Shown here piece after piece: positions 82 to 23,300 of a stretch of DNA of 64,000 nucleotides. Within the stretch, counting starts at the first letter, position 1. Every line of letters begins with the position of its first letter. Under the pieces are notes generated by a model, which saw only the letters and a program-made list of their open reading frames with translations, was not told where the DNA came from and searched no databases. The DNA is from Rhodosorus marinus CCMP1338 (taxonomy: Eukaryota; Plantae; Rhodophyta). The position numbers and the translations under genes are program-made. The DNA lies in contig JAMWBK010000006.1 of NCBI GenBank assembly GCA_029953675.1, positions 1,054,001 through 1,118,000 on the forward strand, written 5' to 3'.

Positions 82-2450
82 GAAGGATTTTTGATAGAGA
101 ACATCCGATATCCTACAAGTATCTAGTAGGGACCCTTTCAGTGGGTTGTACATATCAATAAATCGGAAACATCCTACTTGCTACAGAAACTTAAGACTCG
201 GAAATTCAGAGCAGAATGAAACAAGAGCTCGGTTTCTCGTCCTTTGGTCATACACTTAACCCAATCGTAGCGCTGTGTTCAATAGGAGTCAGTAGAGTCC
301 TACACTACTGTAGAGCTCTCCACAGTATCGAGTAAATACCAGAAACTAGGAACTAGCATTTGTGGCAAGGCCTGTGCACTTGCACTTGAACTCATTGGAA
401 CGAGAATAATACTGCGCTGCAGAGTAGAACGAAGAGTAAACGATGCCTTTGGCGTCGTTTTCTATTTCGACAGGCAGGCTCGAGAATAATACTGCGCTTG
501 CAGAGATAAACGAAGTGAAGCCGACGGCGTTGATGAAGTTTTCTACCTCGATAACGAGGCTCTAGACACGTATTTTCTTCTCCTATTGATCTTACTTCCT
601 GTTTTGGGTGGCGGTGGATCGGGTCTGTCGGTGGAGAAACGAAGTTGAGATTTCGTCGGCCGTTTGGAAATGGAAAGGGGAGAAGAGGGGCAGGGGCGTT
701 CCGGTAGATAGACGAGTATGGGATTGAATTTCGCCCAACGGAGTGTTGAGATAATTTGCTGCGCGTTCAAGCGGATCACCTCACCTGTCATGCTAAACGG
801 GGGATTTCCTTACATGCAAAAATTTCGCGAATCTACGGACTGTGTTCTTGGGGACGAGCTCCTTCGACCGAGAAACGTCGAAAACCTGCCAAGGGCCAAC
901 GCTAATTCGAATAATGTTGACTCGAGCTAAACGAAGCTTTCAGTAAGATTTGCGCAGCATGAGCCCCATAAATTCTGATTCCCATATGCAACCTAAAACA
1001 TGAGCAGATCCGCTGAACAGGTTGGGGAATTGGCGAGGGCTAAAAGGAGTCGGAATCCATATGTGACGGATTCCCGTCGGATGCATTTCGCGAATACGAA
1101 CGGTTCCAATTTAATAATCGGCTTGTTCACATGCACACCTCGCTTATGGAAAGGGTAAATACTATTTCAGAACTACTCTCCAATTAATATTTTAAACAAT
1201 TCAAGACAAGGTTGACGAAAGGAGCTTTAGTTTTTGAGCCAATACACTGATTTTTCCGTTTGTATTTTATTCGCAACTGGATTGGCTAGCAGTTTTTTTG
1301 TTTTTCTTAAAACGTAGTCGGAATTCGCTCTTTTCGAAGCTAAATTTTTTCTTGTCGACCAATTGTTATACCGAGAAAGAGTAGGCCCCTTTCAAAACCA
1401 ATCCAAATTTTAGCCCCAATATTTTTATTAAACAAATTCATTCAATATATATTGCGCGCTTATGTACTGCTGTCGATGTTGGAGCGCGCGATCTTCACTC
1501 GCGTGGTCTTTTTTTCGCTTCGGGGGTTTTTTCTTCAGTTTCCGATTAAACAGATTCATTCAATATTTTTGCGATCAACTATTAAACACACACAAGGCTT
1601 GCGTAATTATTCCCTCTAACCTGTGTTTCAATGTTTTTTGAAGAATTACGAGCCCGGCTAAGCGTCAGGATCAGCGGGGGGATCTGTCTTTGATTACAGA
1701 TTACATATGCTGATTAGCAAAGGTGACACGGAAAGGTTGAATGCATCATTTTTTTTTGTTAGCGTATTTTATTTTCTATTTACGTGCGGGAGGTTAGGAT
1801 TTCACCCCTTTTGCTACGCGTTTTTTTCATTGAGGATTGGATTTTTTTTGTAGTCCGTTCTAACACAGAGGCGAGGGGATAAAACGGGTAAAGGCCGGGA
1901 AACACAGTGTAATTCTGTCCTGGGATGACACCTCGCCCACGAAGTATGCATTGATGTCCGCTGACAAGGCGAATGTTGCCCCTGGTAAACGGTCAATCAG
2001 GTTTACACGGGAAAAAAATCGGATAAATGAAATGTCACAGATGTTGGGCTGTCCTGCTCAGGCCCGGTTTTCGGGGCTAGCTAACTTTTGAACATTTTCC
2101 AAGGGCCAATGATGGTTTCAAAAATTTTTACTGGGCACGAGTCCCTGGATTCCGGTGCTTGTAGGCAACCAGAACTTTCGACAGATCTGAAAAAGTTCAA
2201 GAAATCCGGCGAGGGCTAAGCCGTGGGAACCTGTATGGGACAGACGTCTGCCGTTTAGTAACGGAAGTCTTTGGGTCCCCTCCTCGCAGGGAAAGGGGAC
2301 GAAAATCAGTACATTCTGTGCTCCTTGTGGATGCAACAAATGGGGCGAACTATCGCAGAGTGCGACGGTGGAAACCTCGATTCCGTTTACCTTGCGGATG
2401 CCTTACTTGGCCCACCACTTTGTCATCCCTATTGTCATCCCTATACAGAC

Positions 2451-2587: not shown

Positions 2588-3388
2588 ATGAAGACTGCTG
2601 TGTATATCGCACTTGTGGCGGCATTGGTTGCCGTTCTCGGTGTAGCAGAGGCGGCGCCGTTCGTCTGCAAGGACCCACACTTCCAGAAGCCCAACTTCAG
2701 GACCATCACTCACGGCCAGAGCCACAACGCACACGGTTTGAAAACCGCCTTCGACTACTTCAAGGATATTCTTGGAGGCAAAGACAACGGAAGCAACCCG
2801 GGACCACTCAGGAAAGGACACCGATCTATCAACTGGGATGCTCCAGTTGTTCCCTTTGAGTTCCCGAGGAAGTTCTTCGAAGAGACCGTCACTCGTGGAC
2901 TCGCTGTCGCAAGCAAGAACAACAAGTTCCGTGTGAGCAACCCGGAACCCAACCACATCGGTGACGACAAGTTCTCCACCATCAACCACCGTGAGTCCAA
3001 GAAGTTCCAGACCTTCAGCCCCAAGAGACTCTTCACACCGATCAAGGACAACGAGTTCTGGATCCGATTCACGGTCCCTGGAAAGAAGACCAAGGCTGTG
3101 GTGAGAGGATTCGGAGCGGTGTTCGTGGGCGTTGACTTGGAGAGAGTGACCAAGATGACTGCCTACGACATCAACGACTGTGTGATCGCGACCGAGTACG
3201 TTGAGGCGAAGAGGAACGGACTGTCGTTCCTTGGATTCTACTTCGAGAAGCCGATCATTGCCCGTGTTGCGATTGAGCTTGGCAACTTCGAGATCGATGC
3301 GAGGAACTACTGTGGATACAGGTGCGATGAGGACATTGTCGTTTTGGATGACTTCTTGTACGCGGAGCCACAGAGCATCTTCGGTTAA
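2588..3388 (+). CDS. Secreted 266-aa tandem-array protein, copy 2 (bacterial PEP-CTERM-associated-like domain, no sorting tail)
   Basis: Intronless ORF with signal peptide MKTAVYIALVAALVAVLGVAEA. Strongly C/G-ending codons, TATATATAG 137 nt upstream, AATAAA 76 nt after the stop. Motifs GGKDNG..PGP..G.RSINWD, FQTFSPKRLFTP, GFGAVF.GVDL, LSFLG, DIVVLDDFLYAEPQ. Confidence 0.95.
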   Translation: MKTAVYIALVAALVAVLGVAEAAPFVCKDPHFQKPNFRTITHGQSHNAHGLKTAFDYFKDILGGKDNGSNPGPLRKGHRSINWDAPVVPFEFPRKFFEETVTRGLAVASKNNKFRVSNPEPNHIGDDKFSTINHRESKKFQTFSPKRLFTPIKDNEFWIRFTVPGKKTKAVVRGFGAVFVGVDLERVTKMTAYDINDCVIATEYVEAKRNGLSFLGFYFEKPIIARVAIELGNFEIDARNYCGYRCDEDIVVLDDFLYAEPQSIFG

Positions 3389-3469: not shown

Positions 3470-6400
3470 TCGGAAACATCCTACTTGCTACAGAAACTTA
3501 AGACTCGGCAATCCACAGTAGAAAAAAACAAGAGCTCGGTTTCTCGTCCTTTGGTCATGCACTTAACCCAATCGTAGCGCTGTGTTCAAGAAGAATCAGT
3601 AGATTCGTACACTACTATAGAGCTCTCCACAGTATCTTGTGAATACCAGAAAGTAGAAAAAACTACCCATCTCAGCAACGCTTGCGCACTTACAGTTCAA
3701 CTCACTGGACGAGCGTACTACTGCGCTGAAGAGTAGAACGAAGAGTATTCGATGTCCTTGGTGAGGTTTTCTATTTCGACAGCAAGGCTCAAGACGCTGT
3801 TTAAAACGCTTGCTGAACTGACTAGAAGCAAACTGCACTTCGCAAACTATCTGGCGGTCCCTAAACCATAGGCTGGAATATCCCAGGAACCATCGGCGTC
3901 CGGGTAGCCTATGGTCGGTCCCTGACTGCAAATGAACGTGTTCATTCGGAGACTGGAAAAGCAAGCCGAGGGGAAAAACAAGACTACTACTGAAGGCGAA
4001 GACCATGGCCTCCAACAACCAAGCAGCGTATATAGGAAGAAACTTGAAGTCGATGAACGTATAAAGTTTGTTGGGAGGCTGAGAAGAAAAACCGAGGGCG
4101 AAAAAGGACTAGTGAAGGCGAAGGTCACGCGCCTCCAACGTCAAAGTAGCGTTCATACGCCTGGACAGGAAACTCAAACGGGCAAATAAGGTGGAGAGCC
4201 GGTCGGAGCGGTCGCGGAACCTTTCAGACAAGGTGAACGGGAACCAACGGAATCCCTTAAGCCAATGCTAGAAGTACCGAGTGGAATACCCAAGGATTCC
4301 GGTACCCGAAAATCAAGTATTCGATTGTGATGCCCGGGTAACCCAGAATACTCCTGCACAGTGTAACTCTTGTTGAGAGTGTACATACGTAGAGCGTGGG
4401 ATATGTCTTAATATGTATGGCTATGAGTTCAAGATGCTCCTATGATTTAGTACTCAGGAAATTTTGTGAGGCTTGGCGCTGTTGGTGGTTTTGAGTTCTC
4501 GTCTACAGTAGTAGAAATGCTTTTGGGTCCTGGGGTCACGTAGTTTAGCCACCCGGCGAGTTTGACTTGTTGTTTGGCGAGGGATCAAAGGGGCTTTTGC
4601 AGTGAGCGAGAAATCGTCGACCCGGAAGACCCATCAGCTGTCCCAAGTTCACTTGCATAGCTGATCTGTAGTATTTTTGAGGTCCGATCGGGAAGACACA
4701 GGCTCCAGGTGCAGAATGGATTCGCGCCCGATGTTTTCCGTGGATCTTACAATCCGCGAGGAGACGATTTGGAAAGTTTGACGCGTGAATCTCTCGAGAG
4801 AGGATTTGGTGTAGAGGACCATCTTGCCAACGACGCTGGTTGGTAGTCCGGTTGTTGTCGGGGGGTTCCGTTAGCTAAAAAAGTGTAATTTGTGGTAAGT
4901 TGCGAGGATGGGTCAGGGGGCACATGTATTTTCTTGATAGCCGCACGAACTGAGAGATTTTGGGTAGGGGAGGTTGTGCTGAGTGGGAAATACCTCGTTG
5001 ACCTGGGGTTGTAAGGCCTCCTGACGTGATGGAATGTGCGTTGTTGCCCTTCCACAAGCCCTGCAATATGCCCGGTCTTGGCTTTTGGCACCCCTCCCCT
5101 CCTGATCTAAAGTGATCCAAAAAGAAGGGTGAGGTATCACGAGCCCAGTACGCCACGGAAAACGGAAAAGTGTTGAATCCAATCGCAGTCATCAGTTTTT
5201 CCCTAGAATCTTGGAACCACCGTAAGCTAGGTTTGCACTTGCATATAAAATTAGACGATCTTACGCTGTTCGACACTGTTCGATAGTGGATTGGCCAAAA
5301 CAGTTTGAGTTTGTCATGAGAACCGAAAGTTGCAATATATTCAAGAATATCTTCACCAAATTATTGCACCTGTTGAATTGGACCTCTCAATCCTGCCTCG
5401 AATTGTTTTCGCCCCCTTTTTTGAAAAATGAAATGGTTTATAGGTTGTGCAAAGCGCCGTCCACGCAGCCGTCAGCAGCCGAGACGAGCTCGGGTTCGGT
5501 GCAACCCGCGCCATAAAGGTCTTCAAGTCTGTTTTGATTCAGTCGGGAATTTACTGGTCTCCATATGCAGCAGATGAAAATTTGTAGTTACTATTATTTG
5601 TTTTTTAGGTTTACATATGCAGACTCCCAGGCTTTTCGTATTGAGCTGACTTCCTTTTTTGTTGAGGGGTGGATCGCGTATGTCGGTGGCGAAACTAAGT
5701 TCAGATTTGGCGGGCGTTTGAAAGGGGAGGGGGAAAAGAGGGGAAGGGGGGTTCCGGTAGATCGATGAGGATGGGATTCTACTCGGTAAACGACGCGTTG
5801 AGAAAATTTGCGTCACGCTAAATGGGGATTTCCTGACACACGAAAATGTCGCGAATCTACGGACTGTATTCTTGGACGGTTCCTTCGACCGCGAAACGTC
5901 GAATATAATGTTGACTCGAGCCAAATGCAGTTTTCAGTAATATTCGCGAAACATGAGCCCGTGAATTCTGGCTCACATATGCAACCTGAAACTTGGACAG
6001 ATCTGCAGAACATTGGGGAATTAGTACAGCTTGAAAGGTATAGGAATCCACACGGCACAGCCGTCTGCCGGGTCGTTTCATAGCCCAAGTTTTTAGGGCT
6101 CTCATCACGGATAACGGAAGAAATTCGGCAGGGTCTGTGCTTATGAAAGATGTAACAAATATGATATACCTTTACAGCGTGCAATAATCGGAATCACGTC
6201 CCAACGACTTCGACACTAACCCATTTCCCTCCCGACTGCCCTCCCCGTTAAACTTGCCTAGCCCAGAACGTCTTGACTCTGCTAAAGTGGTGGTTTGAAA
6301 TACTTGCGTTCCAGGTAGGCCTCAACTAGGTCACGCAGAGGAAGCGTTTAGAGCTAGCCGCTCCACCCGGCGAATCCAAACTCTTAAAAAGCACCTAATT

Positions 6401-6715
6401 CGCCAACTTCTACACCTTCCGCAAGGGGCCCGCGAAAACGGTTAATTCGATTGAACCAAGCATGCTCTGACCAACATATTTAAGTAATTCAAACAACGAT
6501 TCTCACAAGCCCTTATATTTATATAAAAACACACACCTTTTTGTATGCTTCTTATTTATGCTTAATTGGCAGACGGGGTCTGTTTTTCTTAAGAAGCAGT
6601 CTAAATCTGATCCTTTTTAACCTTTTTGGTCTTCTTTTGGCCACGACTATACCTAGAATAGTGGGTCCTCCCAAGTCCCATATGAATTTTAGCCCCATTA
6701 TCTACTCAGAGGTCT

Positions 6716-6763
6716 GAGGGTATTGATTAAGCCTCAGATCCCTGAGGCTTAATCAATACTCTC
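6716..6763. repeat. Perfect 18-bp inverted repeat with 4-nt loop
   Basis: gtattgattaagcctcag (6720-6737) - atcc - ctgaggcttaatcaatac (6742-6759); extends 3 more pairs past one mismatch. Confidence 0.9.
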
Positions 6764-7742
6764 CTGATGGATGCCGTCCGATGCGACGTGGAGGACCTAC
6801 TAGGCTCGGTGTAACCTCAGGAGCGGCGTGCTGATCTGCTTTGATTGTTGCTTACACCCCTTGTTTAGCGAAGGTGACAATGAAAGATTCAATGGATCGT
6901 ATTTTTCGGTGAGTTTATTTTTCCTTAATAAAGAGACGGGGGAAAGGGGGGTTAGATTTAGATTCTATCACTCTTGTCAAGCGTGGAGCGTTTTCATGGA
7001 TTGGGCTTTGTGTCGGGTCCATATACAATAAGACCGCGGCGAGGGGCGAAAACGGGTTTGGGGAGGTGGAGAGTGAGAATCTGCCTCGTGCATGGGCACC
7101 TCGCCCAACGCAGTGTGTGGGTAGGTTTGATGTCCGCCGCAAGGTGACTGATGTCCCTATAACAATCAATCAGTTTTGTTCTGAAACAAAAATCGGATAA
7201 ATCAAAGGTCACGGAAGTCGGGCTGTGCTCCTCAGCTCGGTTCTAGTCTAGCGAACTTTTGAACATTTTCCAAGGGCCTACAATGGTTTCGAAAATGTTT
7301 ACTGGGCACGAGCCCCTGAGTTTCGGTGCTCGTAGGCAACCTGAACTTTGGGCTCTGCGGAACTTCAGGAGATCCGGCGAGGGCTAAAAGGTGTGGGAAC
7401 CTATGTTGGACAGCGGTTTATCTTTTAATAGAGGAAGTTTTTCGGTCCCTCGTCCCAAGGACTAAACGAAAATCCGTAGATTCCGTGCTCCTTGCGGGTG
7501 CAACAAATGGGGCGAACTATACCAGAGTGAGATGATGGCAATCTCGATTCCGTTTACCTTGCGGATGCCATGCTTGCCCACCACTTTGTCACCCCTCTTG
7601 CAGACTATATATAGCTGATCCTCCAGTTCCTTCTACATCCTGGTACTCGAAGCTCATCAAACACCAGAGACAGTAGCATTGACGGAGACCCAGAGAAGAT
7701 CAGCAAAGAGACTGTTAGAGAAGACTACATTCAAGGAGGATC

Positions 7743-8543
7743 ATGAAGACTGCTGTGTATATCGCACTTGTGGCGGCATTGGTTGCCGTTCTCGGTGTAT
7801 CGGAAGCGGCGCCGTTCGTCTGCAAGGACCCCCACTTCCAGAAGCCCAACTTCAGGACCATCACTCACGGCCAGAGCCACAACGCACACGGTTTGACAAC
7901 CGCCTTCGAGTACTTCAAGGATATTCTTGGAGGCAAAGACAACGGAAGCAACCCGGGACCACTCAGGAAAGGACACCGATCTATTAACTGGGATGCCCCA
8001 GTCGTTCCCTTTGAGTTCCCGAGGAAGTTCTTCGAAGAGACTGTCACCCGTGGACTCGCTGTCGCAAGCAAGAACAACAAGTTCCGTGTGAGCAACCCTG
8101 AACCCAACCACATCGGTGACGACAAGTTCTCCACCATCAACCACCGTGAGTCCAAGAAGTTCCAGACCTTCAGCCCCAAGAGACTGTTCACACCGATCAA
8201 GGACAACGAGTTCTGGATCCGGTTCACGGTCCCTGGAAAGAAGACCAAGGCTGTGGTGAGAGGATTCGGAGCGGTGTTCGTGGGCGTTGACTTGGAGAGA
8301 GTGACCAAGATGACTGCCTACGACATCAACGACTGTGTGATCGCGTCCGAGTACGTTGAGGCGAAGAGGAACGGACTGTCGTTCCTTGGATTCTACTTCG
8401 AGAAGCCGATCATTGCCCGTGTTGCGATTGAGCTTGGCAACTTCGAGATCGATGCGAGGAACTACTGTGGATACAGGTGCGATGAGGACATTGTCGTTTT
8501 GGATGACTTCTTGTACGCGGAGCCACAGAGCATCTTCGGTTAA
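7743..8543 (+). CDS. Secreted 266-aa tandem-array protein, copy 3
   Basis: Intact ORF, 4 aa differences from copy 2 (A20S, K52T, D56E, T202S). TATA at 7606. Confidence 0.95.
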   Translation: MKTAVYIALVAALVAVLGVSEAAPFVCKDPHFQKPNFRTITHGQSHNAHGLTTAFEYFKDILGGKDNGSNPGPLRKGHRSINWDAPVVPFEFPRKFFEETVTRGLAVASKNNKFRVSNPEPNHIGDDKFSTINHRESKKFQTFSPKRLFTPIKDNEFWIRFTVPGKKTKAVVRGFGAVFVGVDLERVTKMTAYDINDCVIASEYVEAKRNGLSFLGFYFEKPIIARVAIELGNFEIDARNYCGYRCDEDIVVLDDFLYAEPQSIFG

Positions 8544-11500
8544 GAAGGATTTTTGATAGAGAACATCCGATATCCTACAAGTATCTAGTAGGGACCCTTT
8601 CAGTGGGTTGTGCATATCAATAAATCGGAAACATCCTACTTGCTACAGAAACTTAAGACTCGGAAATTCAGAGCAGAATGAAACAAGAGCTCGGTTTCCC
8701 GTCCTTTGGTCGTACACTTAACCCAATCGTAACGCTATGTTCAATAGGGGTCAGTAGAGTCCTACACTACTATAGAGCTCTCCTCAGTATCGTGTGAATA
8801 CCAGAAACTAGGAACTAGCATTTGTGGCAAGGCCTGTGCACTTGCACTTGAACATTGGAACGAGAACAATACTGCGCTGCAGAGTATAGCGAAGAGGAGC
8901 CGACGGAGTGGATCAGGTTTTCTATCTCGACATCAAAACTCGAGAAGCCTGTTTAAAGCACTTGCTAAACTGCCTGGAAGCAAACTGCGCTTCCAAACTA
9001 TGCAGCGGTCCCTAAACCGGCTGGAATATCGCAGCAACAGTCGGCTTCCCGGTAGCTTCTGGTCGGTCCCTGACTGAAAATGAATGTGTTCATTCGGGGA
9101 GACTGAAAAAGAAAACCGACGGGAAAACAAGACTACTGAAGGCGAAGACCATGCGCCACCAACATCAAAGCAGCGTTTATATATAGAAACTTGAATTCAA
9201 TGAACGTGTTTATCAGATACTGGAAAGAGGAAGCCGAGGTGGAAAAAAGACTAGTGAACGCGAAGATCACGCGGCTCTGACGTCAAAGCAGCGTTCATAC
9301 ACCAGAACAGGAAATTCAAACTGGTTTACAACGAGGAGAGCTAGTCGGGGCGCTCGCGGAACAATTCGCAACGTCAACGGGCACCAACGGAATCCATCAC
9401 GGCCATTCTCGAAGTATCGTAGTGGAATAAGCCGGAGCAACGATCCCGCTGTGCGAAAATCAAGTATTCGGTTGTGATGTCCTAGTAAAATGGATTACTC
9501 CTGCACAGTAAAGCTTTCCACTTGTTGAGAGTGTTCATCGGTAGAGCGTGGAATACGTCTTTGGCGCGAGGTCAACTGGGCTTCCGCCGTGAGCGAGTAA
9601 TTCTCGACCCGGAAAACCCATCAGCTGTACCAAGTTCACATGCATCGCTGTTCTGGTTATGTTTTTTTAGCTCCACCGAGAAGGCACAGGCTCCAGGTGC
9701 AGGATGGATTCGCGCTCGATGTTTTTGGTGTTCTTACGATCCGCGACCAGCCGATGTGGAAAGCTTGAAGAGTGAGCCTCTCGAGCGAGGATCTGGTGTA
9801 GGAACCCTCTTGCCAACGACGCTGGTTGGTAGTCTGATTGTTGTCAGAGGTGTCCGTTAGGTGAAAAAGGGTTGCTAGTGGTAAGTTGTTCGGACAGGTC
9901 AGGGGGCGGATGTATATCTTGATTACCGCACGAGCTCAGAGATTTTGGGTAGGGGAGGTCGTCCGTGAGTGGGAAATACGTCTTGGACTTGGGGTTTCAA
10001 CGCCTCCTGCCGTGATGGATTATGCGTTGTTGCCCTTGCACAAGCCCTGCAATATGCCCGGTCTTGGCTTGGCACCCCTCCCTCCTGATCTAAAGTGATC
10101 CAAAAACAAGGGCGAAGTATTATCAGCTCACTCCGCCCGTACGGAAAACGGAAAAGAGCTGAATTCAATGAATTCGCACTCACCAGTTTTTCCCTAGAAT
10201 CTTGAAACCACCATAAACTGCGTTCGCGCTTACATATAAAATTGGATGGTCTTTGTGAGAAACTAACAGTCTTATACACACTTGGACACTATTCGATAGT
10301 GGATTGGCCAAAACATTTTCAGGTTTTCACGAGATCCGAAATTTGTAATATATTCAAGAATATCTTCACCAATTATTGCAAATAGCTGATTTGAACCTCC
10401 CAATCACGCCTCGAATTGTTTCCCGCCGCTTTTTTTTTGAGAAGTGAAATGGTTCGGGTGTTCGCGCAGAGCTTCAAGCTCGGCAGCCGTCAGCAGTCAG
10501 TGAAGAGCTTGGGTCCGGTACGGCCAGCCCCATTGCGGTCTGCAAGTCTGTTTTGATTGCAGCCGGGAGTTTACGAGTCTCCTAAGCGACGATGATGCAA
10601 CAGATGAAAGTTGGTGGTTACTACTATTACTTGTTTTTTAGGAAACCAGATGAAGACTGCCAGACTCTTCGTATTGACCTGAGTTCTTTTGTTTTGAGGG
10701 GTGGATCGGGTATGTTGGTGGAGAAGCGAAGTTCAGATCTCGGCGAGTGCTTGAAAATGAAAGGGGGAGAAGAGGGGAAGGGGTTTCTGGGGTAGATAGA
10801 TTAACTGGGATTGAGCCTCGCCCAACGGTGCGTTTAGAAATTTTCTGCGCGTTGTAAGCCGACCATCTCACCCGACACGTTGAAGGGGGATTTCCTGACA
10901 CATGAAAATGTCGCGAATCTGCGGACCGTGTTCTTGGGGACAAGCTCCTTCAACCGGCAAACGTCGAAAACCTTCCAAGGGCCAACAACAATTTCAATAG
11001 TGTAGACTCGAGCAAAATGAAGATTTCAACAATACTTGAGTAGCATGAGCCCCTGACCTGTCGTTTTCGTAAACCACTTCCCCCTTGGGCGATCTGCAAA
11101 ACATTAGGGGAATTAGTATGCCTTAAAAGCTGTAGGAATCCCTTCGGCACAGCCGTCTGCCGGGTCTGTTTTCGTAACGCAAGTTTTTGGGGTTCTCGTC
11201 ACGGATAATCCAAGAAATTCGGCAGGGCCCGTGCTCCTATGACATGTAACAAATGGGATATTGATACCATTGCAGCGTCCAATAATGGGAATCTCGGTCC
11301 AACGATTTCGACATTAATCATTTCCCTCTCGGATGCCCTTCCCGTACAACCTGCTAGCCCAAAAAGTCTTGAATCTGCTGAAGTGGTGGTTTGAAATACT
11401 ATCCGTTCCACCTAGGTCCCAACTAGGTCACGATGAGGAAACGTTTAGTGGTGGCCGCTCTTCTCCGCGAATGCAAAACCCTTAAAAAGCGCCAAATTCA

Positions 11501-12631
11501 CCACTTCTCCGGGCGCCGAGGCCGACTATGAAAACGGGTTACTGCTTTTCGTTTTTCTTAAGAAGTAGTCCTAATCTGATTCCTTCTGAAACTGTTTGGT
11601 CTTCTTTTGGCCACTACAATGCCTAGAACAGAGGGTCCTCCCAAGTTCCATCTGAATTCTAGCCCCAATACATCTAAACCAATTCTTTAGATCTGAGGCT
11701 TAATCAATACTCCTCCGCTCTATAGATACGGTCCAATGCGACGTGGAGGATCTAGTAGGCTCGGTGCAACGTCAGGAGCGGAGCCGCGTGCTGATCTGTT
11801 TTGATTGATACCTTAAACGTAAGGTTGCACCGAAAGATTCACCGGATCGTATTTTTCGGTGAGTGTGGAGCTTCGTGGAGCTTCGGATTCCTCCAAGCGT
11901 TTTCATCTGGGATTGGATATTTGGCTGGGTCCATCCAGATAAGACGGGGCGGGGGCTAAACGGGAGAGGGGGAGGTGGAGAATGACATCTCCCCCAAACG
12001 GAGCGAGTACGACGCTTGATGTTCGTCGTGCGAATAGTTGTCCCTGATAAACAATCAATAAGTTTTATTCGGAAACAAAAAAAATTGGATAAATGAAATG
12101 TCACAGATGTCGGGCTGTGCTCCTCCGTTCTAGTCTAGCGTACTGTTGAATATTCCCAAGGACCATTGTCCGTTTCAAAAATATTTACAGGGCACGAGCC
12201 CCTGAATTCCGGTGCTCGTAGGCAATTTGAAAATTGGGGAGTCCTGCAGGACTGAAGGAGATCCGGCGAGGGCTAGAAGAAGCCGAAATTATATGGGACA
12301 GCCGTCTGCCGCTTAACAACTGAAGTTTTTGGGTCCCCTTCTCACAGGGAATGGACAAAAATCCGTAGATTCCGTGCTCCTTGCGGGTGCAACAAATGGG
12401 GCGAACTATACCAGAGTGAGATGATGGCAATCTCGATTCCGTTTACCTTGCGGATGCCGTGCTTGCCCACCACTTTGTCACCCCTCTTGCAGACTATATA
12501 TAGCTGATCCTCCAGTTCCTTCTACATCCTGGTACTCGAAGCTCATCAAACACCAGAGACAGTAGCATTGACGGAGACCCAGAGAAGATCAGCAAAGAGA
12601 CTGTTAGAGAAGACTACATTCAAGGAGGATC

Positions 12632-13432
12632 ATGAAGACTGCTGTGTATATCGCACTTGTGGCGGCATTGGTTGCCGTTCTCGGTGTATCGGAAGCGGCG
12701 CCGTTCGTCTGCAAGGACCCCCACTTCCAGAAGCCCAACTTCAGGACCATCACTCACGGCCAGAGCCACAACGCACACGGTTTGACAACCGCCTTCGAGT
12801 ACTTCAAGGATATTCTTGGAGGCAAAGACAACGGAAGCAACCCGGGACCACTCAGGAAAGGACACCGATCTATTAACTGGGATGCCCCAGTCGTTCCCTT
12901 TGAGTTCCCGAGGAAGTTCTTCGAAGAGACTGTCACCCGTGGACTCGCTGTCGCAAGCAAGAACAACAAGTTCCGTGTGAGCAACCCTGAACCCAACCAC
13001 ATCGGTGACGACAAGTTCTCCACCATCAACCGCCGTGAGTCCAAGAAGTTCCAGACCTTCAGCCCCAAGAGACTGTTCACACCGATCAAGGACAACGAGT
13101 TCTGGATCCGGTTCACGGTCCCTGGAAAGAAGACCAAGGCTGTGGTGAGAGGATTCGGAGCGGTGTTCGTGGGCGTTGACTTGGAGAGAGTGACCAAGAT
13201 GACTGCCTACGACATCAACGACTGTGTGATCGCGTCCGAGTACGTTGAGGCGAAGAGGAACGGACTATCATTCCTTGGATTCTACTTCGAGAAGCCGATC
13301 ATTGCCCGTGTTGCGATTGAGCTTGGCAACTTCGAGATCGATGCGAGGAACTACTGTGGATACAGGTGCGATGAGGACATTGTCGTTTTGGATGACTTCT
13401 TGTACGCGGAGCCACAGAGCATCTTCGGTTAA
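12632..13432 (+). CDS. Secreted 266-aa tandem-array protein, copy 4
   Basis: Intact ORF; differs from copy 3 by INHRE>INRRE. TATA at 12495. Confidence 0.95.
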   Translation: MKTAVYIALVAALVAVLGVSEAAPFVCKDPHFQKPNFRTITHGQSHNAHGLTTAFEYFKDILGGKDNGSNPGPLRKGHRSINWDAPVVPFEFPRKFFEETVTRGLAVASKNNKFRVSNPEPNHIGDDKFSTINRRESKKFQTFSPKRLFTPIKDNEFWIRFTVPGKKTKAVVRGFGAVFVGVDLERVTKMTAYDINDCVIASEYVEAKRNGLSFLGFYFEKPIIARVAIELGNFEIDARNYCGYRCDEDIVVLDDFLYAEPQSIFG

Positions 13433-13607: not shown

Positions 13608-13697
13608 TAACCCATTGTAGCGCTGTGTTCAATAGTTGTAACCCATTGTAGCGCTGTGTTCAATAGTTGTAACCCATTGTAGCGCTGTGTTCAATAG
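13608..13697 (+). repeat. 31-bp tandem repeat, ~3 copies
   Basis: taacccattgtagcgctgtgttcaatagttg repeated without spacers; single copy in the other units. Confidence 0.92.
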
Positions 13698-13972: not shown

Positions 13973-14930
13973 GAATTTGTTGCCGATAGCTTCGTACAAG
14001 CATCCTGCGAACGAGTTTTGTCTCGGCAACAGCAGTTGGCAGATGCCATTGAGCACCTTCCTGGCGGATGCAACAATCGGCTTACTTGCTTTCTCACTTT
14101 TGTGGTCCCCGGCTCAACTATTGGCCGCAGCAGTCTTCTACCACAATGGAGTGCGCGGATCGCTGCTAGAGCGGACGAGGCGACGACTACCCACTGGGCA
14201 CGCTGTTGGATGAACCCCTTGCGCTGGAGCCACCACCTGATAGGGACTTAAGTCGGGCCCAGCTCGCTCTACCCTTGGGCTTGGGCGAATTTGGCGTTGG
14301 GGACGGGCGTCTTGTATATGCTCGCCTGCGGCGGTAGCGTCCTCGGCCAGCGTGCTTCGTACCTTGGTGACCTTTATGTTACGCCGTGCCTGCATTTTGA
14401 CTCGGGCACGGACCACCGAGGACCCCGTCACTCTTCCACCCCCGCCGCTGAGTATCTATGATGGCCTGCAGCAGGCGTTCAGTAGGTGCAGCGCCGTGCC
14501 GGACGAGAATCGATCAAATTTTAGTTCCTGGAGGGAGATGTTATGAGGACGCAAAGAGGCCGTCGTGGAATCCACCGTCGACCGAGTGCGGGCCGACGAT
14601 GGGGAAGCCAGCCCCCGGACACCGGCGGCAGATTACCCGGGTACCAGCAGAACGCGGAACTCACGCACTGATGTGATTCATCATAGCCTCACCTGTGGCC
14701 AACACATTGCAGCGCACGGCATCTTTCTCATCTCCGACCTCACACCGCCCACAACCAGGGCTCGCCTACGGGAGATGAGAGGTCATCTGTCTCACCTGTG
14801 GTTTACCACTCTGCCCTTGTCACCGGGCCATGTCTGGACGCCTTCCAACTCCGCACTGCCAGCATGCTCGCCGAGGCGCGCCATCGCCGGCTGGGTTTGC
14901 ACCCTTTTTGCCCCTAGTTTCTAGTTCCCT
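13973..14930 (+). mobile_element. Degenerate non-LTR retrotransposon fragment (CRE/RLE-clade-like, C-terminal RT region)
   Basis: GC-rich segment unique to this spacer. Frameshifted peptides LADAIEHLP, RAQLALPLGLGEFGV, SPAAVASSASVLRTL, RARLREMRGHLSHLWFTTLPLSP and HRRLGLHP follow the order of CRE-like motifs I recall (QA.LP.R.GGLG / PAAY.AS / RARL.S..G..AWL.A.P / R.RLGL). Confidence 0.7.
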
Positions 14931-16010
14931 TTCAAGGGGGCGTTCGCTCCATCCATCTTGTCAACAAGACTCGATATTCGTATTTCTTCTGTTGAGGTTT
15001 CTTCCTGTTTTGGGTGGTGGATCGGGTTTGTCGGCAGAGAAACGAAGTTCAGATTTCGGTGGGCGTTTGAAAAGCGTTCGGGTAGATAGATGAGTATGGG
15101 ATTGAACCTCGCCCACCGGAGTGTTGAGATAAAATACTGCCCGTTGTAAACGGATCACCTCGGCCTGTCATGTTAAAGCGGGATTCCCTGGCACAACAAC
15201 TGTGGTGAAAACAGCGGAATCTGTTTTTTGAGGACAAATTCCTCGGTCCAAGAAACTTTGAAAACTTTCCGAGGACCAATGATAATTTCAATGATGATGA
15301 CTCGAGCTAAACGAAGATTTCAGTAATATTTGCTCAGATGAGCCCGTGAATTCTGATTCTGATTCCTGTATGCAACCTTAAGTTTGGACGGAGTTCCGCA
15401 GAACAACTTGGGAAATTCGCGACGGCTAAAAAGAGTCGGAATCCATGTCACGGCGGTCCGGGCGGATGCATTTCAATGCGCTTGGTCGCGGATACAAACG
15501 GATCCATTCTTACCCGCTTGTTCAACAAGCTCAATTCGCCTATGGAAAAGGTAAATTCTATGCAGAACTACTCTCTGGCTAATATTTTACACAATTCGAA
15601 CGAATGGTTAATATTTTACACAATTCAAGGCAAGGTTGACGGGAACACCTCTTCATTTTTGGGGCAAATACACCGATTGTTTTGTTTCGCATCTTGGTCA
15701 CTACTGGATTGGCTAGTAGGTTTTTGTTTTTCTTAAAACATAGATAGAATCTGTTAAGGATTCTATTTACCTCACACAATCCTTTCTTTTTGAAGTTAAG
15801 AGGTTTTTTTCGACCAATTGTTACACCGAGAAAGATTAGAGAGTAAGGGCCTTTCAAATCCAATCGATTTTTTTGCCCCAATGTCTTTGAGGCCTGAGCC
15901 ACTATATAGCACGAGGCTTTCATAAATATTCCCTTTGGCTCAACGTCAGGATCAGCGGGGGATCTGTTTTGATTTCGGTTTACAAACGCTGATTAGCAGT
16001 GAAAGTGACA

Positions 16011-17782: not shown

Positions 17783-18229
17783 GGAGGATTTTGCTACAAA
17801 GCATCCGATATCCTGTAGTAATCCATCGCCAGCGCACTACAGTAGGCGCCTTTTCATTGGGTTGTCCATATCAATAAATCGGAAACATCCTACATGCTAC
17901 TGAAATTTAAGATTACCACATTCACAGTACAAAAGACCGATACGTTTCGTGATTTGATCAACCCTTACCCCATCGTGGCGCTGTGTTCAATAGCGGCCTG
18001 TAGAGTCCCAAACTACTATAGAGTTAATTCTCGAAAGTGGGGTCTTCAGAACAGGAAGTAGAAAGAACAACAGCAGTTGTGGCAACGCTTGTGCACTTAC
18101 AGTTCAATTCATTGAGGCTTCCTATCTTGACAACAAGGCTCGAGAGGCGTATTTTCTTCTTCTTCTATTGATCTTACTAATTGTTTTTGGTGGTGGATCG
18201 CGTGAGAAAACTCGCTGCCAATTGTAAGC

Positions 18230-18777
18230 GGATTACCTCGCCTGGCACGCTAAAGGAGGAATCCGGACACATCAAATGTGGCGAAAACAGCGGGTTTTGT
18301 TTTGAGGATGAGCTTCCCAGGGGAAAGATACGCTGAAAACTTTCCTAGGGTCAATATAATTTCAATAATGTTGCTGGAGCAAAATGAAGAAATCAATAAT
18401 ATTGAAAAATGAATGAATTTGTTTAATCCGAAACTCAGAGAAAAAAAAGCGATGGGAAAAAAAAGAGTATTTGTGCAGTATGAGCCAGTGAATTCTGGTT
18501 CCCGCATCCAACCTAAGATTTGGACGTATGTACAGAACCTGTTGGAGAATTTTAGGGAACTAAAGGGTCGGAATCTATACGTCACGCAGCGACCGGCGGA
18601 TGTACTCCGCCATTTTGCAACAGGCTTTTTTGGGGTCCGTCGTCACGAGGAACGCACGGAAATCGGTAGAACCTGTGCTCTCCGGAGATGCAACGGATGG
18701 GGAGTCATCCTCAGCGTGCGATGACAGGAATCTGGAACCAACGATTTCACCGCCAATCCGTTTACCTTCTGGATGCC
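18230..18777 (+). repeat. TATA-less paralog ('shadow copy') of the array gene's upstream region; others at ~730-1085, ~5760-6240, ~10815-11340, ~15105-15470
   Basis: 18661-18777 (aatcggtagaacctgtgctc..gatgcaacggatgggg..ccgtttaccttctggatgcc) aligns by eye to true upstream 12359-12458 (aatccgtagattccgtgctc..gtgcaacaaatgggg..ccgtttaccttgcggatgcc). Other copies share cctcgcccaacg, ccaagggccaa, gcatgagccc and ggcgagggctaaaa blocks in the same order. Confidence 0.8.
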
Positions 18778-20311
18778 GCACCCGTTAACCCGGCTTGGCC
18801 CGGAATGTGTTGAGCTACATTACGCAGTAGTCCACTGAATGGCAGTTTTGAAGTACTTCCGTTAGGGCCCGGTGCGGAAACGTTCTTGGAGGCCTCCACT
18901 GCATTCTTGCGAATAGAAAACGATAAAAAGGACCAATTTCAACCCTTTTCACTAAATGCAAGTTCCCTATGAAAACAGTAAAATTTATACGACTAGTATA
19001 TTATATTGAATATTGTTAAAACAATTCAAGCAAAGATCTATATTAGCATCTGGATTTATCATTGTAAATACATCATCGTCTTGGCTTGCACCTTAATTCA
19101 CTACTGTATTGGCCAAGAGTTTCTGGTTTTTATTGAGGAATATTGAACACTTTGCGGTTTTAAAGCAATTAGGTTCATTTTTGACCAATCATCATATATC
19201 GAAGACTGGGTAGTTCTCGCTCAGGTCCGAATTTTAGCCCCAATAGTTCTGACTCTTAATCAATACGTTCCGCTCAGTTGCGGGCTGATGCAACGTGGTT
19301 GATTGCCGACGCCAGCGCGAAAGCCAGAAGCGGCGTGTGGATCTGTTTTGACCTAGCTTACATACGCTGTTCCGAATAAAAACATTATTTCGATTAGCGA
19401 ACATCGCTTAAAGCTTTCAAGATGACGCCGAAAGCTCCAACGGATCATGTTTTTTTTGGCTGAGTGAACTTTCCTTTATTGAAGGGCTGAGAAGCTTAGG
19501 CTGCCCGGGTTTGGATCGATTTCCTGCCTCTCTATTAAAGCGTTTCCGTTGGGGATTAGCTTTTTTTTGTAGGCCGTTAGGACCTCGGCGCGGGGCTAAA
19601 ACTGGTAGCATTAGACGGAGAGTGTAAATCCAGCGTGAAACCTCGCCCAACGAGGTGTGAAAGGTAGCTTGATGTCCGTCGCAAGGGGATTATTGCCCCT
19701 GATTAAACAGTCCATCAGTATTATTATTCGGAAACACACAACAAAAAAGGATAAATCAAAAGCCATAAAAGCTGTCCTTTTCAGGTTCGGTTCCGGTCCA
19801 GTTACTGTTGAAGACTTTCAAAGGGCCAAGGATGGCTTTAAAAATGTTTACGCGGAACGAGCCCCTGAATTAAGGGGCTTGTAGGCAACCTCAACTTTGG
19901 AAAGATCTACAAAACTGTTGCAGGAAAAGGGACGAGGGCTAAAAGCCGTCGGACGTTATTTGGGACAGCCGGCTGTTGTATAATAACGGAAGTTTTTGGG
20001 TCCCCTCCTCACAGGGAATGGACGAAAATTCGTAGATTCTGTCCTACTTGTAGATGCAACAAATGGGGCGCACTATCGCAGAGTGCGACGATGGCAATCT
20101 CGATTCCATTTACGCCGCGCTTACTCCGTGGATACCATACTTGGCCCACCACTTTCTCACCTTTCTAAACACTATATATATAGCTCATCCTCCAGCTCCT
20201 TCTACATTTGGGTACTCGAAACTCATCAAGCACCAGAGAGAGTAGCATTGACGGAGACCCAGAGAAGATCAGCAAAGAGACTGTTAGAGAAGACTACATT
20301 CAAGGAAGACC

Positions 20312-21112: not shown

Positions 21113-23030
21113 GAAGGATTTTTCTACAGAACATCTGATATCCTATGAAGATCCATAGCCAGAGTGCTACCTTAGGCACCCTTTCGCTGGGATGTACATA
21201 TCAATAAAAAGGAACCATCCTGTATTGGTATTGAAACCATAAATTTCTCGCTCTCAGCTCGACACTTTTGTCCACATGCCCGAAAAAAGCTCCATACACG
21301 CGTTTCAGGAAGCACGCAGCTCGATCTTACTCTCGTTTCTCACGTGAAAAGCGATAAATGTTGTTTCTTGAGAAGGACATGTTCCTGTTTACCTTTCATA
21401 TAGAAGAATTATCTTCCTCTTTAGGTGCCGTAATTCAGTGTTCGTCGTTTCCCTGCTCAGGCATCGAACCTCGTCTCAGCCCTGCGGATGCGACGATGGA
21501 TAGGGCAGACTGTCTTTTCAAAGAGTACGCAAGATTCGACTGAAAAGCGGGACGACGGTTTCTTGTTCTCAACACGAAGGACGGTCGGGAAACAGAAAAG
21601 TTTCTGGATCCCAATTTTTTTTCTTGAATACTGTTTTTCTCTTTATCGTATTTTCTATTCAAGCGCGCTTGAACAACCACTTTCGCCTTCCGTCCAGTGT
21701 ACCATGTAGTACTTTAAACAGATCTGCCCTTTGAATAATCGTACCGTGTGCTCATACTCTAAATATCTGCTGGAAACTGCTTGGATGGGAGACTGTGCCT
21801 GTCCCCACACAGCTCGAGGTTCTGTGGATTCCGAAAACCCAAGAGAAATCAAGAACTATGACCTCCGAATGTTCCACAAAATCGCAGAATTATGCGGATG
21901 GAAACAAAGCTTCACAGATCTGCACTCAAAACAAAACGTCAGATTGCGAGGTAGCGAAGTTGGTCCCGGATGGATAACGTTTCCGTCGACTCCAAGGGCC
22001 TCCAGTTATCGTTTTCTTGCTTCCCCAACTCGCGCAACTCCGGGAATATGAAAACGATCGAAAAGGGGCCAAACTCACCAACTGTCACGAAGCGCTAGCT
22101 AGCCATGAAAACGGTTAAACATATGCAACAAATACTCGCCTCGAGTTTTTTTAACTGATTCAACAACAGGCTGCAAGCGTTTGCTTGCACAAACATCTAC
22201 GTCATCATCAAAAATACACAAAAACCTCTAAGGAGACTGAGAATACACAAAAAACTATCGGAACCGTCCAAATTTACCAATTCTTCACCAAACGCTTACC
22301 GCCGAATCGAAAACGGTATTATTGATACAAAGGACCACTAGTTTCTCATTCCTAGTTTTACCCAATATGCAAAAATCTTTGGGTCAAAACTCTGCATTTA
22401 TCATTGAAAATACATCTACACGTTCAAGAGCACCTCACTCCTTACTGGATTGGCCAATACGTTTTTGCTTTTTGAAGACTAATACATATTTTTGTGTTTT
22501 TAAAACTATTAAGATATACTTTGACCAATCATTGTACCCGTACGTGGGTCCTCCCAATTCGCAATTTTAGCCCCATTAATTCAGGAACTTAATCAATATT
22601 CTCCCGTGAGATATTGTGCCATGCAACGTGGAGGATTTACTAGGCCCGGAGCAACGGCAGGAGCAGGGAGCGGATCTGTTTTGATTGTTTGCTTACATCC
22701 GGGGCTTTAGACGACTGTGGTCCAATCTTCCTTTTACATCGAAAGGTTCAACGGATCCTAGTTTTTTGTGAGTTTTTCTTCTAAGGAGAGCGGGGGTTGG
22801 GATTCGAGACTCGGACTTGTGACTCTTGCGACGCGTTTTGATGGGGTATTGGATTTGTTGCGGGAACCCTGCGATGAATGATAAGACACCGGCGAGGGGC
22901 AAAAGCTGTGAGAATCTATCCGGGGATGGCGGAGTGTGCGAGGTCGATTGATGTCCGTTGCAAGGGAACAAGTGTCCCTCATACAGTCAATGGATTATTC
23001 TGTGACAAAAAAAATGTACAAATCAACTAT

Positions 23031-23300
23031 CGCAGAAGATGTCGGGCCGTGCTCGTCAGGCTCAATTCCGGTCCAGCTACTAGTTGCACGCATTCCGCGG
23101 GCCATCGAGAATTTCAAAAATGTCTACTGAGCGCAAGTCACTGAGTCCCGGCTCTCTGAAACGTCACAGAAGATGTCGGGCTGTGCTTCTCAGGTTCGGT
23201 TCCGGTCCAGTTAACTGTTGAAGACTTTCACAGGGCCAATGAAGGCTTTGAAAATGTTTACGCGGAACGAGCCCCTGAATTAAGGGGCTTGTAGGCAACC
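23031..23300 (+). repeat. ~134-bp imperfect tandem duplication upstream of copy 7 (likely out-of-register crossover junction)
   Basis: cagaagatgtcggg..gtgct..cagg..c.gttccggtccag....gttg..cgggcca..ga...ttt.aaaaatgt at 23031 and 23165; the second copy continues into sequence nearly identical to copy 6's upstream region. Confidence 0.75.

What the first reader, a model, noticed from the sequence alone, without database searches (positions are those of the whole stretch)
5760..6240. Most spacers carry a TATA-less 'shadow' paralog of the gene's own upstream region
Seen: about 1.2-1.4 kb upstream of each real promoter is a diverged collinear copy of it (cctcgcccaacg / ccaagggccaa / gcatgagccc..aattc / gcaacc..aac..cagatc / ggcgagggctaaaa / acagccgtctgccg / gtgctc..atg.aacaaatggg / ttt.cct..cggatgcc). 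The fuller copies (spacers 2, 3, 5) end ~37 nt before where the TATA box would be, with no TATA, UTR or CDS after them. They share a private ~19-nt insertion (ccaacgatttc.....aat at ~6208, ~11299, ~18738), so the shadow lineage predates unit duplication. Spacers 1 and 4 hold shorter copies; spacer 6 is unclear. Inference: either scars of deleted gene copies, or retained enhancer-like duplicates analogous to rDNA spacer promoters but in a Pol II protein-coding array.
Basis: partly seen in the sequence, partly recalled or inferred. Interest (0 to 1): 0.7.

Follow-up and report, generated by a model that had tools for sequence, protein, structure and literature searches.

The report
Decaying promoter-upstream copy in array spacers
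Five of the six spacers in a red-alga tandem gene array carry an old, TATA-less copy of the gene's upstream region, and it looks like a decaying leftover of one ancient rearrangement rather than a conserved enhancer.

Summary
Window 1-24.6 kb is a tandem array of an intronless 266-aa secreted-protein gene, almost certainly in Rhodosorus marinus. A profile of the six true upstream regions (T) finds diverged collinear copies (S) in spacers 1-5, with E 3e-18 to 5e-33 and 59-108 bits against 4.5 bits at most in shuffles. The copies lie 1.14-1.36 kb upstream of their counterparts. Homology covers T -725/-670 to -174 and stops about 30 nt before the TATA. No TATA, UTR, CDS or 3'-flank relic follows. 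S and T form separate clades, and the S copies share private indels, so one event predates array expansion.

The evidence favours a neutral relic:
- In unit pairs of uniform ancestry, S diverges like the adjacent non-promoter spacer (77 vs 81%, 79 vs 79.5%).
- Columns invariant in T do not predict columns invariant in S (OR 0.64-0.99).
- The best repeated T motif is decayed in 3 of 5 S copies.
- S carries at least 8 indels of 15 nt or more, against 1 in T.
- S1 and S4 lack the 3' half, and spacer 6 has no old shadow.

Spacer 6 instead holds a recombination junction that partly duplicated the promoter, which shows a plausible mechanism. Enhancer-like retention is not excluded (about 0.13). Interest is modest.

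The parts
5791..6259 (+). Shadow S2, the finding's own block. It is a diverged copy of the true upstream region from about -700 to -174. It carries two internal deletions of 27-29 nt and the private insertion at 6201.
719..1091 (+). Shadow S1. It holds the 5' two-thirds only. The 3' part, which includes the GCAACAAATGGGG block, is deleted. It keeps a perfect GGCGAGGGCTAAAA motif at 1032.
10807..11356 (+). Shadow S3, the most complete copy (profile positions 27-528 of 701).
15098..15482 (+). Shadow S4, truncated like S1. The two share a 91-nt deletion.
18203..18796 (+). Shadow S5. It has a 68-nt A-rich insertion and a 125-nt deletion at its 5' side.
7044..7605 (+). True upstream region T2. Its counterparts are T1 1897-2450, T3 11959-12494, T4 16283-16844, T5 19613-20174 and T6 23157-23584. 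Length is conserved at 553-595 nt.
7606..7742 (+). Core promoter (TATATATAGC at -137) and presumed 5'UTR of gene 2. Identity among units is 93-100%. This region is absent from every shadow.
7743..8543 (+). CDS of gene 2 (266 aa, with a signal-peptide-like N-terminus). It is one of six intact copies; the others are at 2588-3388, 12632-13432, 16982-17782, 20312-21112 and 23722-24522. dN/dS is 0.08-0.19, apart from 0.56 for the near-identical pair 5-6 (three differences). dS is 0.006-0.13.
5632..5790 (+). preS, a block directly upstream of the shadow that is not promoter-derived but is conserved among units as well as the shadow is. It also occurs at 576-718, 10642-10806 and 14931-15097.
6260..7043 (+). 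'post' block between the shadow and the true upstream region. It is present in all six spacers and is the most diverged part of the unit (54-61% in deep pairs). It is not homologous to the gene, the 3' flank or preS.
22930..23156 (+). Spacer-6 junction duplicate. The old unit-6 upstream region ends here and abuts a unit-5-like segment that starts at 23157. As a result, 23030-23144 and 23164-23278 are two copies at 69.6% identity of the same stretch of the upstream region, roughly -540 to -410.

Best explanation
**What it is.** The shadow is a fossil of the gene's distal upstream region, from about -700 to -174 relative to the ATG.

**How it arose.** A single rearrangement created it in the ancestral repeat unit, before the array expanded. 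Two routes fit equally well:
- a misaligned exchange that duplicated the upstream region without the core promoter;
- a whole-unit duplication followed by clean loss of the core promoter, CDS and 3' flank.

The block then rode along each time the unit was copied.

**What has happened since.** It has drifted. Substitutions accumulate at the same rate as in the surrounding spacer. Independent large deletions and insertions have accumulated. It was lost when spacer 6 was rebuilt.

**Why the genes still look alike.** Gene conversion keeps only the cassette from about -170 through the CDS and the first roughly 350 nt of 3' flank nearly identical. The shadow lies outside this cassette.

**Shown versus inferred.**
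- Shown: homology, boundaries, single origin, rates and the indel excess.
- Inferred: lack of function, and which type of rearrangement occurred.
For: **Single ancient origin**
- S and T are reciprocally monophyletic. S-T identity is 51-59% in the joint alignment. No S copy is closer to the T of its own unit.
- The S copies share private indels.
- The 3' breakpoint is sharp and common to S2, S3 and S5, at T -174.

**No expression elements**
- Nothing matching the TATA, UTR, CDS or 3' flank follows any shadow.
- There is no Rfam family and no tRNA.
- The TATA-like run at 6515 in spacer 2 is not conserved in the other spacers.

**Neutral rate.** In the two unit pairs whose whole spacers share one ancestry:
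- Pair 1-4: S 77.0% against non-promoter spacer 81.0%, p=0.13.
- Pair 2-3: S 78.8% against 79.5%, p=0.71.

**No shared motif constraint**
- T-invariant and S-invariant columns are not associated: OR 0.79, p=0.21, and OR 0.64-0.99 when stratified.
- The longest run invariant across all ten aligned copies (T6 omitted as a near-duplicate of T5) is 3 columns. Permutation gives a mean of 3.8.
- GGCGAGGG(G)CTAAAA occurs twice in every T, but it is intact only in S1 and within two mismatches only in S4.
- The T block that is invariant in all six units, GCAACAAATGGGGCG, is mutated in S2, S3 and S5 and deleted in S1 and S4.

**Relaxed architecture**
- At least 8 indel events of 15 nt or more occur in the five S copies with their short flanks, against 1 in five T copies.

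**Dispensability**
- Spacer 6 has no old shadow, yet gene 6 is intact and its core promoter is identical to that of gene 5.

**A mechanism seen in action**
- The spacer-6 junction shows that misaligned exchange between diverged units makes partial duplicates of the upstream region.

**Concerted evolution limited to the gene cassette**
- dS is 0.006-0.13, against 16-27% raw divergence in T_up (6% for the recent pair 5-6) and 40-46% in 'post' for deep pairs.
Against: - In deep unit comparisons (1v2, 1v3, 2v4, 3v4, 4v5), S is 5-20 points more similar than the 'post' block just downstream of it. In 2v4 and 3v4 it forms an island between unalignable and weakly alignable DNA.
- That pattern could reflect constraint. 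It could also reflect a mosaic genealogy, or homogenisation spreading from the upstream gene's 3' flank. The non-promoter preS block shares the island, which favours the regional explanations. This is not proof.
- T_up itself evolves at the spacer rate. A rate test therefore has little power to detect the diffuse kind of constraint that promoters are under.
- No expression, chromatin or cross-strain data were available.
- The array continues beyond the left edge of the window and was not seen.
Confidence: 0.7

Rival explanations
1. **Retained distal regulatory duplicate.** The shadow would be enhancer-like or 'shadow enhancer'-like. It would still bind the same factors as the true upstream region and boost or buffer transcription of the downstream gene, or of the whole array. 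It would be kept by selection.
For: - The shadow is present in 5 of 6 spacers, in the same orientation and at a similar distance from its counterpart.
- It is more similar between deeply diverged units than the adjacent 'post' block.
- S-T similarity is still detectable although inter-unit 'post' similarity is near the floor.
- S1 keeps a perfect copy of the repeated T motif.
Against: - Its rate equals that of the neighbouring spacer in pairs of uniform ancestry.
- The conservation island also covers preS, which is not promoter-derived.
- Conserved columns in T do not predict conserved columns in S.
- Candidate motifs are decayed in most copies.
- The half most conserved in T is deleted in S1 and S4, and there are many large indels.
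- It is absent from spacer 6.
- Retention in units that descend from one ancestor is the null expectation.
Confidence: 0.13
2. **Upstream region of an unannotated spacer transcript.** The shadow would drive a non-coding RNA or small ORF starting in the 'post' block, using a non-TATA initiator.
For: The 'post' block contains short islands conserved in all six spacers, for example ttttagccccaat, cttaatcaatact, ggatctgttttgatt and cgaaag.ttcaacggatc.
Against: - No TATA-like element is conserved downstream of S.
- There is no Rfam or tRNA hit.
- No ORF is conserved between units.
- 'post' is the fastest-diverging part of the unit.
- S1 and S4 lack the promoter-proximal half that would sit next to such a start site.
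Confidence: 0.05
3. **Two copies of a mobile or dispersed element.** Shadow and true upstream region would both be copies of a dispersed repeat, for example a solo LTR, that landed twice. They would not be a duplicate of the promoter.
For: Dispersed repeats do exist in the window: 24901-25164 matches 42663-42376 on the minus strand at 82%.
Against: - Neither the T profile nor the S profile finds any copy outside the array in the other 40 kb.
- S and T are collinear over about 550 nt, in one orientation, in every unit.
- S stops at a single breakpoint inside a continuous promoter rather than at element ends.
- The rest of the 31-Mb genome could not be searched.
Confidence: 0.03
4. **Chance or compositional resemblance** between spacer DNA and the promoter.
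For: None.
Against: - E-values are 3e-18 to 5e-33.
- Shuffled controls reach at most 4.5 bits, against 59-108 bits for the shadows.
- The reciprocal profile hits all six true regions.
- The copies share private indels.
Confidence: 0

Closest known systems
Pseudogene inside each repeat of Xenopus laevis oocyte-type 5S DNA (own knowledge: Jacq, Miller & Brownlee 1977; Fedoroff & Brown 1978)
   Same: - A truncated duplicate of part of the repeat unit sits in the spacer of the same unit.
- It was made once and then amplified with the unit.
- It diverged from its source while the functional copy stays homogenised.
   Different: - There, the duplicated piece is most of the transcribed gene, in a Pol III array.
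- Here, it is only the non-transcribed distal upstream region of a TATA-containing protein-coding gene.
- Here, the array has few copies and its spacers are strongly diverged.
rDNA spacer promoters (PMC12326227; PMC1215480)
   Same: Copies of the gene promoter lie upstream in the intergenic spacer of a tandem array, in the same orientation.
   Different: - Spacer promoters keep the core promoter, initiate Pol I transcription and recur across vertebrates and flies.
- The shadows lack the core promoter, occur once per spacer and show no sign of constraint.
Xenopus rDNA 60/81-bp enhancer repeats (Labhart & Reeder 1984, cited in PMC12326227; their promoter-derived origin is my own knowledge)
   Different: - They are short subrepeats reiterated many times per spacer, with demonstrated activity.
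- Here there is one block of 350-570 nt per spacer, with decayed motifs and no activity data.
Shadow enhancers of animal developmental genes (own knowledge: Hong, Hendrix & Levine 2008)
   Same: A second, more distal block related to the primary regulatory region of the same gene.
   Different: - Shadow enhancers are defined by shared factor occupancy and overlapping activity, and their binding sites are conserved.
- Here, site conservation was tested and not found.
- Activity could not be tested.

Membership tests
Intra-unit relic duplicate in a tandem repeat (5S-pseudogene type) | A partial duplicate of a unit segment lies within the same repeat unit. | tested here: met
   S lies 1.14-1.36 kb upstream of T in spacers 1-5.
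Intra-unit relic duplicate in a tandem repeat (5S-pseudogene type) | It was made once and co-amplified with the unit, so the duplicate lineage is monophyletic. | tested here: met
   S and T form separate clades and the S copies share private indels.
Intra-unit relic duplicate in a tandem repeat (5S-pseudogene type) | It lacks the elements needed for expression. | tested here: met
   Homology stops at -174. No TATA, UTR or CDS follows.
Intra-unit relic duplicate in a tandem repeat (5S-pseudogene type) | It evolves without constraint. | tested here: inconclusive
   Its rate equals that of the flanking spacer in uniform pairs, there is no motif bias, and it has an excess of indels. However, S is more similar than 'post' in deep pairs.
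rDNA-type spacer promoter | A promoter duplicate in the intergenic spacer of a tandem array. | tested here: met
rDNA-type spacer promoter | It retains the core promoter and initiation site. | tested here: not met
   No match to T -170 to +1 follows any shadow.
rDNA-type spacer promoter | It drives spacer transcripts. | not testable with these tools
   No transcript or CAGE data were available.
rDNA enhancer subrepeats (60/81-bp type) | Short promoter-derived units reiterated in tandem within each spacer. | tested here: not met
   There is one S per spacer. No tandem array lies at S.
Shadow enhancer | Binding-site content shared with the primary element and kept by selection. | tested here: not met
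   The association between T-invariant and S-invariant columns has OR 0.64-0.99. The repeated T motif is decayed in 3 of 5 S copies.
Shadow enhancer | Overlapping regulatory activity. | not testable with these tools
   This needs reporter or chromatin assays.
Dispersed repeat or solo LTR | Further copies elsewhere in the genome. | tested here: inconclusive
   None were found in the other 40 kb of the window.

The most novel reading that the evidence does not exclude
The shadow blocks are retained distal regulatory modules of a Pol II protein-coding tandem array in a red alga. On this reading they are promoter-derived, core-less elements that bind the same factors as the true upstream region and tune or buffer expression of the array. 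That would make them a Pol II counterpart of rDNA spacer enhancers. The S-over-'post' similarity seen in deep unit comparisons would then reflect selection.
Probability: 0.12. Interest if true: 0.6.

Novelty: new member of a known kind. Interest (0 to 1): 0.27.

Why it matters
- **As a relic.** It is a clean, datable marker of how this array was built. One rearrangement came before amplification. Gene conversion is confined to a cassette from about -170 to about +350 past the stop codon. Spacers diverge 3- to 10-fold faster than synonymous sites. A present-day junction in spacer 6 shows the mechanism. This is useful for annotating the Rhodosorus genome and for teaching concerted evolution, but it is not surprising.
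- **If the blocks proved functional.** They would be a rare Pol II analogue of rDNA spacer enhancers, in a lineage where cis-regulation is almost unstudied.
- **A practical point.** The array genes do not appear in the public protein collection, although their neighbours do, so the family may be missing from the current annotation.

Tried and rejected
1. **Relic of a dead gene after the shadow.** tblastn with the protein found nothing. nhmmer profiles of TATA-to-stop and of the 3' flank also found nothing. In-place decay of a CDS is rejected, because a CDS of the same age at about 60% identity would have been detectable.
2. **A larger duplication.** I tested whether 'post' is homologous to preS or to anything upstream of S. 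There were no hits; the best was E=0.13.
3. **ncRNA or tRNA in the spacers.** None were found.
4. **Conserved ORFs in the spacers.** None were found.
5. **Other strains or species for comparison.**
   - The exact protein is not in the collection.
   - The metagenome protein-pattern scan and the 28-mer 5'UTR scan found nothing.
   - The Pyropia homologue is a single copy with no array within 10 kb either side.
6. **Family assignment of the protein.** Pfam and NCBIfam gave no match and PDB gave none with E below 0.4.
7. **Intra-unit S-to-T gene conversion.** I considered this as the reason similarity persists. It is rejected because no S copy is closer to the T of its own unit.
8. **Higher S than 'post' similarity as evidence of selection.** I considered this and did not accept it. 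preS shares the island. Identity falls away from both flanking genes. Pairs of uniform ancestry show no excess.
Full report
**Setting**

The first 24.6 kb of the window is a head-to-tail array of an intronless 801-nt gene on the + strand.
- ATGs lie at 2588, 7743, 12632, 16982, 20312 and 23722. The last 81 nt of a further copy sit at the left edge.
- Unit lengths are 5155, 4889, 4350, 3330 and 3410 nt.
- The 266-aa product has a signal-peptide-like N-terminus. It has no Pfam or NCBIfam match and no PDB match with E below 0.4.
- Its relatives are uncharacterised proteins of red algae (Rhodosorus, Pyropia, Chondrus). Many relatives are cyanobacterial or proteobacterial proteins, some with PEP-CTERM anchors.
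- A neighbouring gene, the SpoU-type rRNA methyltransferase at 43575-45104, is 100% identical to NDN08_000595 of Rhodosorus marinus on a 2.47-Mb contig. The window is therefore almost certainly from the R. marinus nuclear genome described in PMC10250338.
- All six copies are intact. dN/dS is 0.08-0.19, apart from 0.56 for the near-identical pair 5-6 (three differences), and dS is only 0.006-0.13.

Yes.
- A profile of the six true upstream regions (T) finds five further, much weaker matches, one in each of spacers 1-5. E-values are 3e-18 to 5e-33, all in the same orientation.
- The profile scores at most 4.5 bits on 1 Mb of shuffled array DNA, against 59-108 bits for the shadows.
- A profile built from the shadows finds all six true regions in return.
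- Segment-by-segment profiles place the homology at T -725/-670 to -174 relative to the ATG. No segment from -193 onward hits a shadow.
- The TATA (TATATATAGC) is at -137.
- The GCCCACCACTT box at -170 to -157, the best conserved proximal element (96% pairwise identity), is also missing from the shadows.
CCAACGAYTTC occurs at 6201, 11299 and 18738 and nowhere else in 64 kb.
- All five shadows share a second private block of about 36 nt.

**Anatomy of the unit**

From the stop codon onward, each unit reads as follows:
- a 3' flank of about 500 nt;
- unrelated insertions in some spacers only (1.76 kb in spacers 2 and 3, and a GC-rich 1 kb in spacer 4);
- a block of about 160-180 nt that I call preS, which is not promoter-derived;
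- the shadow S, 350-570 nt;
- a 'post' block of about 800 nt, found in all six spacers;
- the true upstream region T_up, 553-595 nt;
- the core promoter and 5'UTR, 137 nt;
- the CDS.

Nothing resembling the core, UTR, CDS or 3' flank follows any shadow. 'post' has no detectable relative upstream of the shadow.

**History**

- In a joint alignment, S1-S5 and T1-T6 form two separate clades. S-T identity is 51-59%, or 60-64% in local alignments. No shadow is closer to the T of its own unit.
- Together with the shared private indels and the common 3' breakpoint, this shows one event that predates the amplification of the present units. It also shows no later S-to-T conversion.

**Concerted evolution is confined to a cassette**

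Inter-unit identity by block:

| Block | Identity |
|---|---|
| CDS | 96-100% |
| TATA to ATG | 93-100% |
| First 350 nt of 3' flank | 71-96% |
| T_up | 73-85% (94% for the recent pair 5-6) |
| S | 62-81% |
| post | 54-61% (75-77% for the two closest pairs) |

Synonymous divergence (0.13 at most) is far below spacer divergence. The genes have therefore been homogenised much more recently than their spacers.

**Is the shadow constrained?**

Five tests bear on this.

1. *Rate.* Pairs 1-4 and 2-3 have spacers that are collinear and uniformly diverged. This removes the problem of mosaic ancestry.
   - Pair 1-4: S 77.0% against non-promoter spacer (preS plus post) 81.0%, p=0.13.
   - Pair 2-3: S 78.8% against 79.5%, p=0.71.
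   - T_up is no better conserved than the spacer in these pairs, so the test has limited power.
2. *Motif bias.*
   - Columns invariant among T copies are not enriched among columns invariant among S copies: OR 0.79, and OR 0.64-0.99 in stratified versions.
   - The longest run invariant across all ten aligned copies (T6 was left out as a near-duplicate of T5) is 3, against 3.8 expected.
3. *Candidate sites.*
   - GGCGAGGG(G)CTAAAA occurs twice in every T (about -705 and -366), only on the + strand and, apart from one two-mismatch match at 4576 in a spacer insertion, only in these upstream and shadow blocks of the array. It is perfect in S1, has two mismatches in S4, and is decayed in S2, S3 and S5.
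   - GCAACAAATGGGGCG, invariant in all six T copies, is mutated in S2, S3 and S5 and deleted in S1 and S4.
4. *Architecture.*
   - The five T copies differ in length by at most 42 nt and have one indel of 15 nt or more.
   - The five S copies with their short flanks carry at least eight. These include a 91-nt deletion shared by S1 and S4, two deletions in S2, and a 125-nt deletion and a 68-nt insertion in S5.
5. *Dispensability.* Spacer 6 has no old shadow. Gene 6 is nevertheless intact, and its core promoter is identical to that of gene 5.

**The one observation that points the other way**

- In deep comparisons (1v2, 1v3, 2v4, 3v4, 4v5), S is 5-20 points more similar than 'post'.
- preS shares this island although it is not promoter-derived.
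- Identity falls away from both flanking genes toward a minimum just after S.
- The S and T trees disagree within units 1-4.
- I therefore read the island as mosaic ancestry, or as homogenisation spreading from the upstream gene's 3' flank. I cannot exclude weak selection.

**A mechanism caught in the act**

- Spacer 6 is a hybrid. An old, strongly diverged 'post plus distal T_up' (22251-23156) abuts, at 23157, a segment that from 23180 on is 98.7% identical to unit 5.
- The two pieces overlap in register. As a result, 23030-23144 and 23164-23278 are two copies, at 69.6% identity, of the same part of the upstream region.
- The 3' flanks of genes 5 and 6 are 97% identical over 382 nt.
- Misaligned exchange between diverged units therefore does produce partial promoter duplicates in this array.
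- The ancient shadow is most simply an older product of the same process. Alternatively, it marks a unit that lost its core-CDS-flank cassette. The data do not separate these two routes.

**Comparison with known systems**

- The closest structural and evolutionary parallel is the truncated pseudogene inside each Xenopus oocyte 5S repeat (my own knowledge).
- rDNA spacer promoters resemble the shadows in position and origin. They keep the core promoter and fire (PMC12326227, PMC1215480), and the shadows cannot on sequence grounds.
- The 60/81-bp enhancer repeats are core-less and promoter-derived, but they are short, reiterated and active.
- Shadow enhancers are defined by shared, conserved binding sites and by activity. 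The first was tested here and not found. The second could not be tested.

**Verdict**

The block is best explained as a decaying relic of one ancient rearrangement that was carried along in the repeat unit (confidence about 0.7). Enhancer-like retention remains possible (about 0.13). This is a new example of a known kind of feature and is of modest interest.

Noticed in passing
window 2588-24522 (six CDS), 1-81: The array gene encodes an uncharacterised secreted 266-aa protein with no Pfam or NCBIfam match and no PDB match with E below 0.4. Its relatives are in red algae and in many cyanobacteria and proteobacteria, and some of the bacterial relatives carry PEP-CTERM anchors. This distribution hints at horizontal transfer. 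None of the six array proteins is in the public protein collection, although the neighbouring FG-GAP and SpoU genes are, so the family may be unannotated in the Rhodosorus marinus assembly.
   Followed up: partly
window about -170 of each gene to about 350 nt past each stop, e.g. 7573-8895: Identity between units rises sharply from about -170 and the TATA and stays high through the first roughly 350 nt of 3' flank. dS (0.006-0.13) is far below spacer divergence. This indicates gene conversion confined to a short cassette. The shadow/true homology ends at -174, right at the cassette's 5' edge.
   Followed up: partly
window 22930-23290; also 21113-21494 vs 24523-24904: Spacer 6 is a recombination hybrid. 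An old diverged upstream region abuts a segment 98.7% identical to unit 5, which leaves a roughly 115-nt stretch of the upstream region present twice at 69.6% identity. The 3' flanks of genes 5 and 6 are 97% identical, and they continue into sequence related to the array's distal flank (21486-21825 vs 25134-25509, 74%).
   Followed up: yes
window 1870, 2208, 7038, 7376, 11948, 12265, 16256, 16615, 19587, 19931, 22891, 23341 (+ strand): The motif GGCGAGGG(G)CTAAAA occurs twice in every true upstream region (about -705 and -366). It is always on the + strand and is absent from the other 40 kb of the window. It is a candidate factor-binding site of this promoter.
   Followed up: partly
window 24901-25164 and 42376-42663 (-): A dispersed repeat of about 290 nt (82% identity, opposite strands). 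One copy is inserted in the flank just after the last array gene.
   Followed up: no
window 3867-5631 / 9019-10663; 13973-14990: Spacers 2 and 3 share a 1.76-kb insertion between the 3' flank and preS. Spacer 4 has an unrelated insertion of about 1 kb at 59% GC at the same place. Neither matches anything else in the window. Their nature (mobile element, organelle-derived DNA or other) is unknown.
   Followed up: partly
window 6716-6763: A 48-nt near-perfect palindrome lies in the 'post' block of spacer 2. The other units carry only one arm (cttaatcaatact...).
   Followed up: no
window 27287-27502 (27-28 kb): A C/T-rich 102-nt tandem repeat (2.1 copies, 95% identity) lies inside a 1-kb stretch with extreme GC skew (-0.61).
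   Followed up: no
window 401-566; 13608-13697; 15978-16167: There are small unit-specific tandem duplications inside the spacers: an 81-nt repeat (x2.1) in the 3' flank of gene 0, a perfect 31-nt repeat (x2.9) in the 3' flank of gene 3, and a duplication of about 105 nt in 'post' of spacer 4. They show ongoing slippage or unequal exchange.
   Followed up: no
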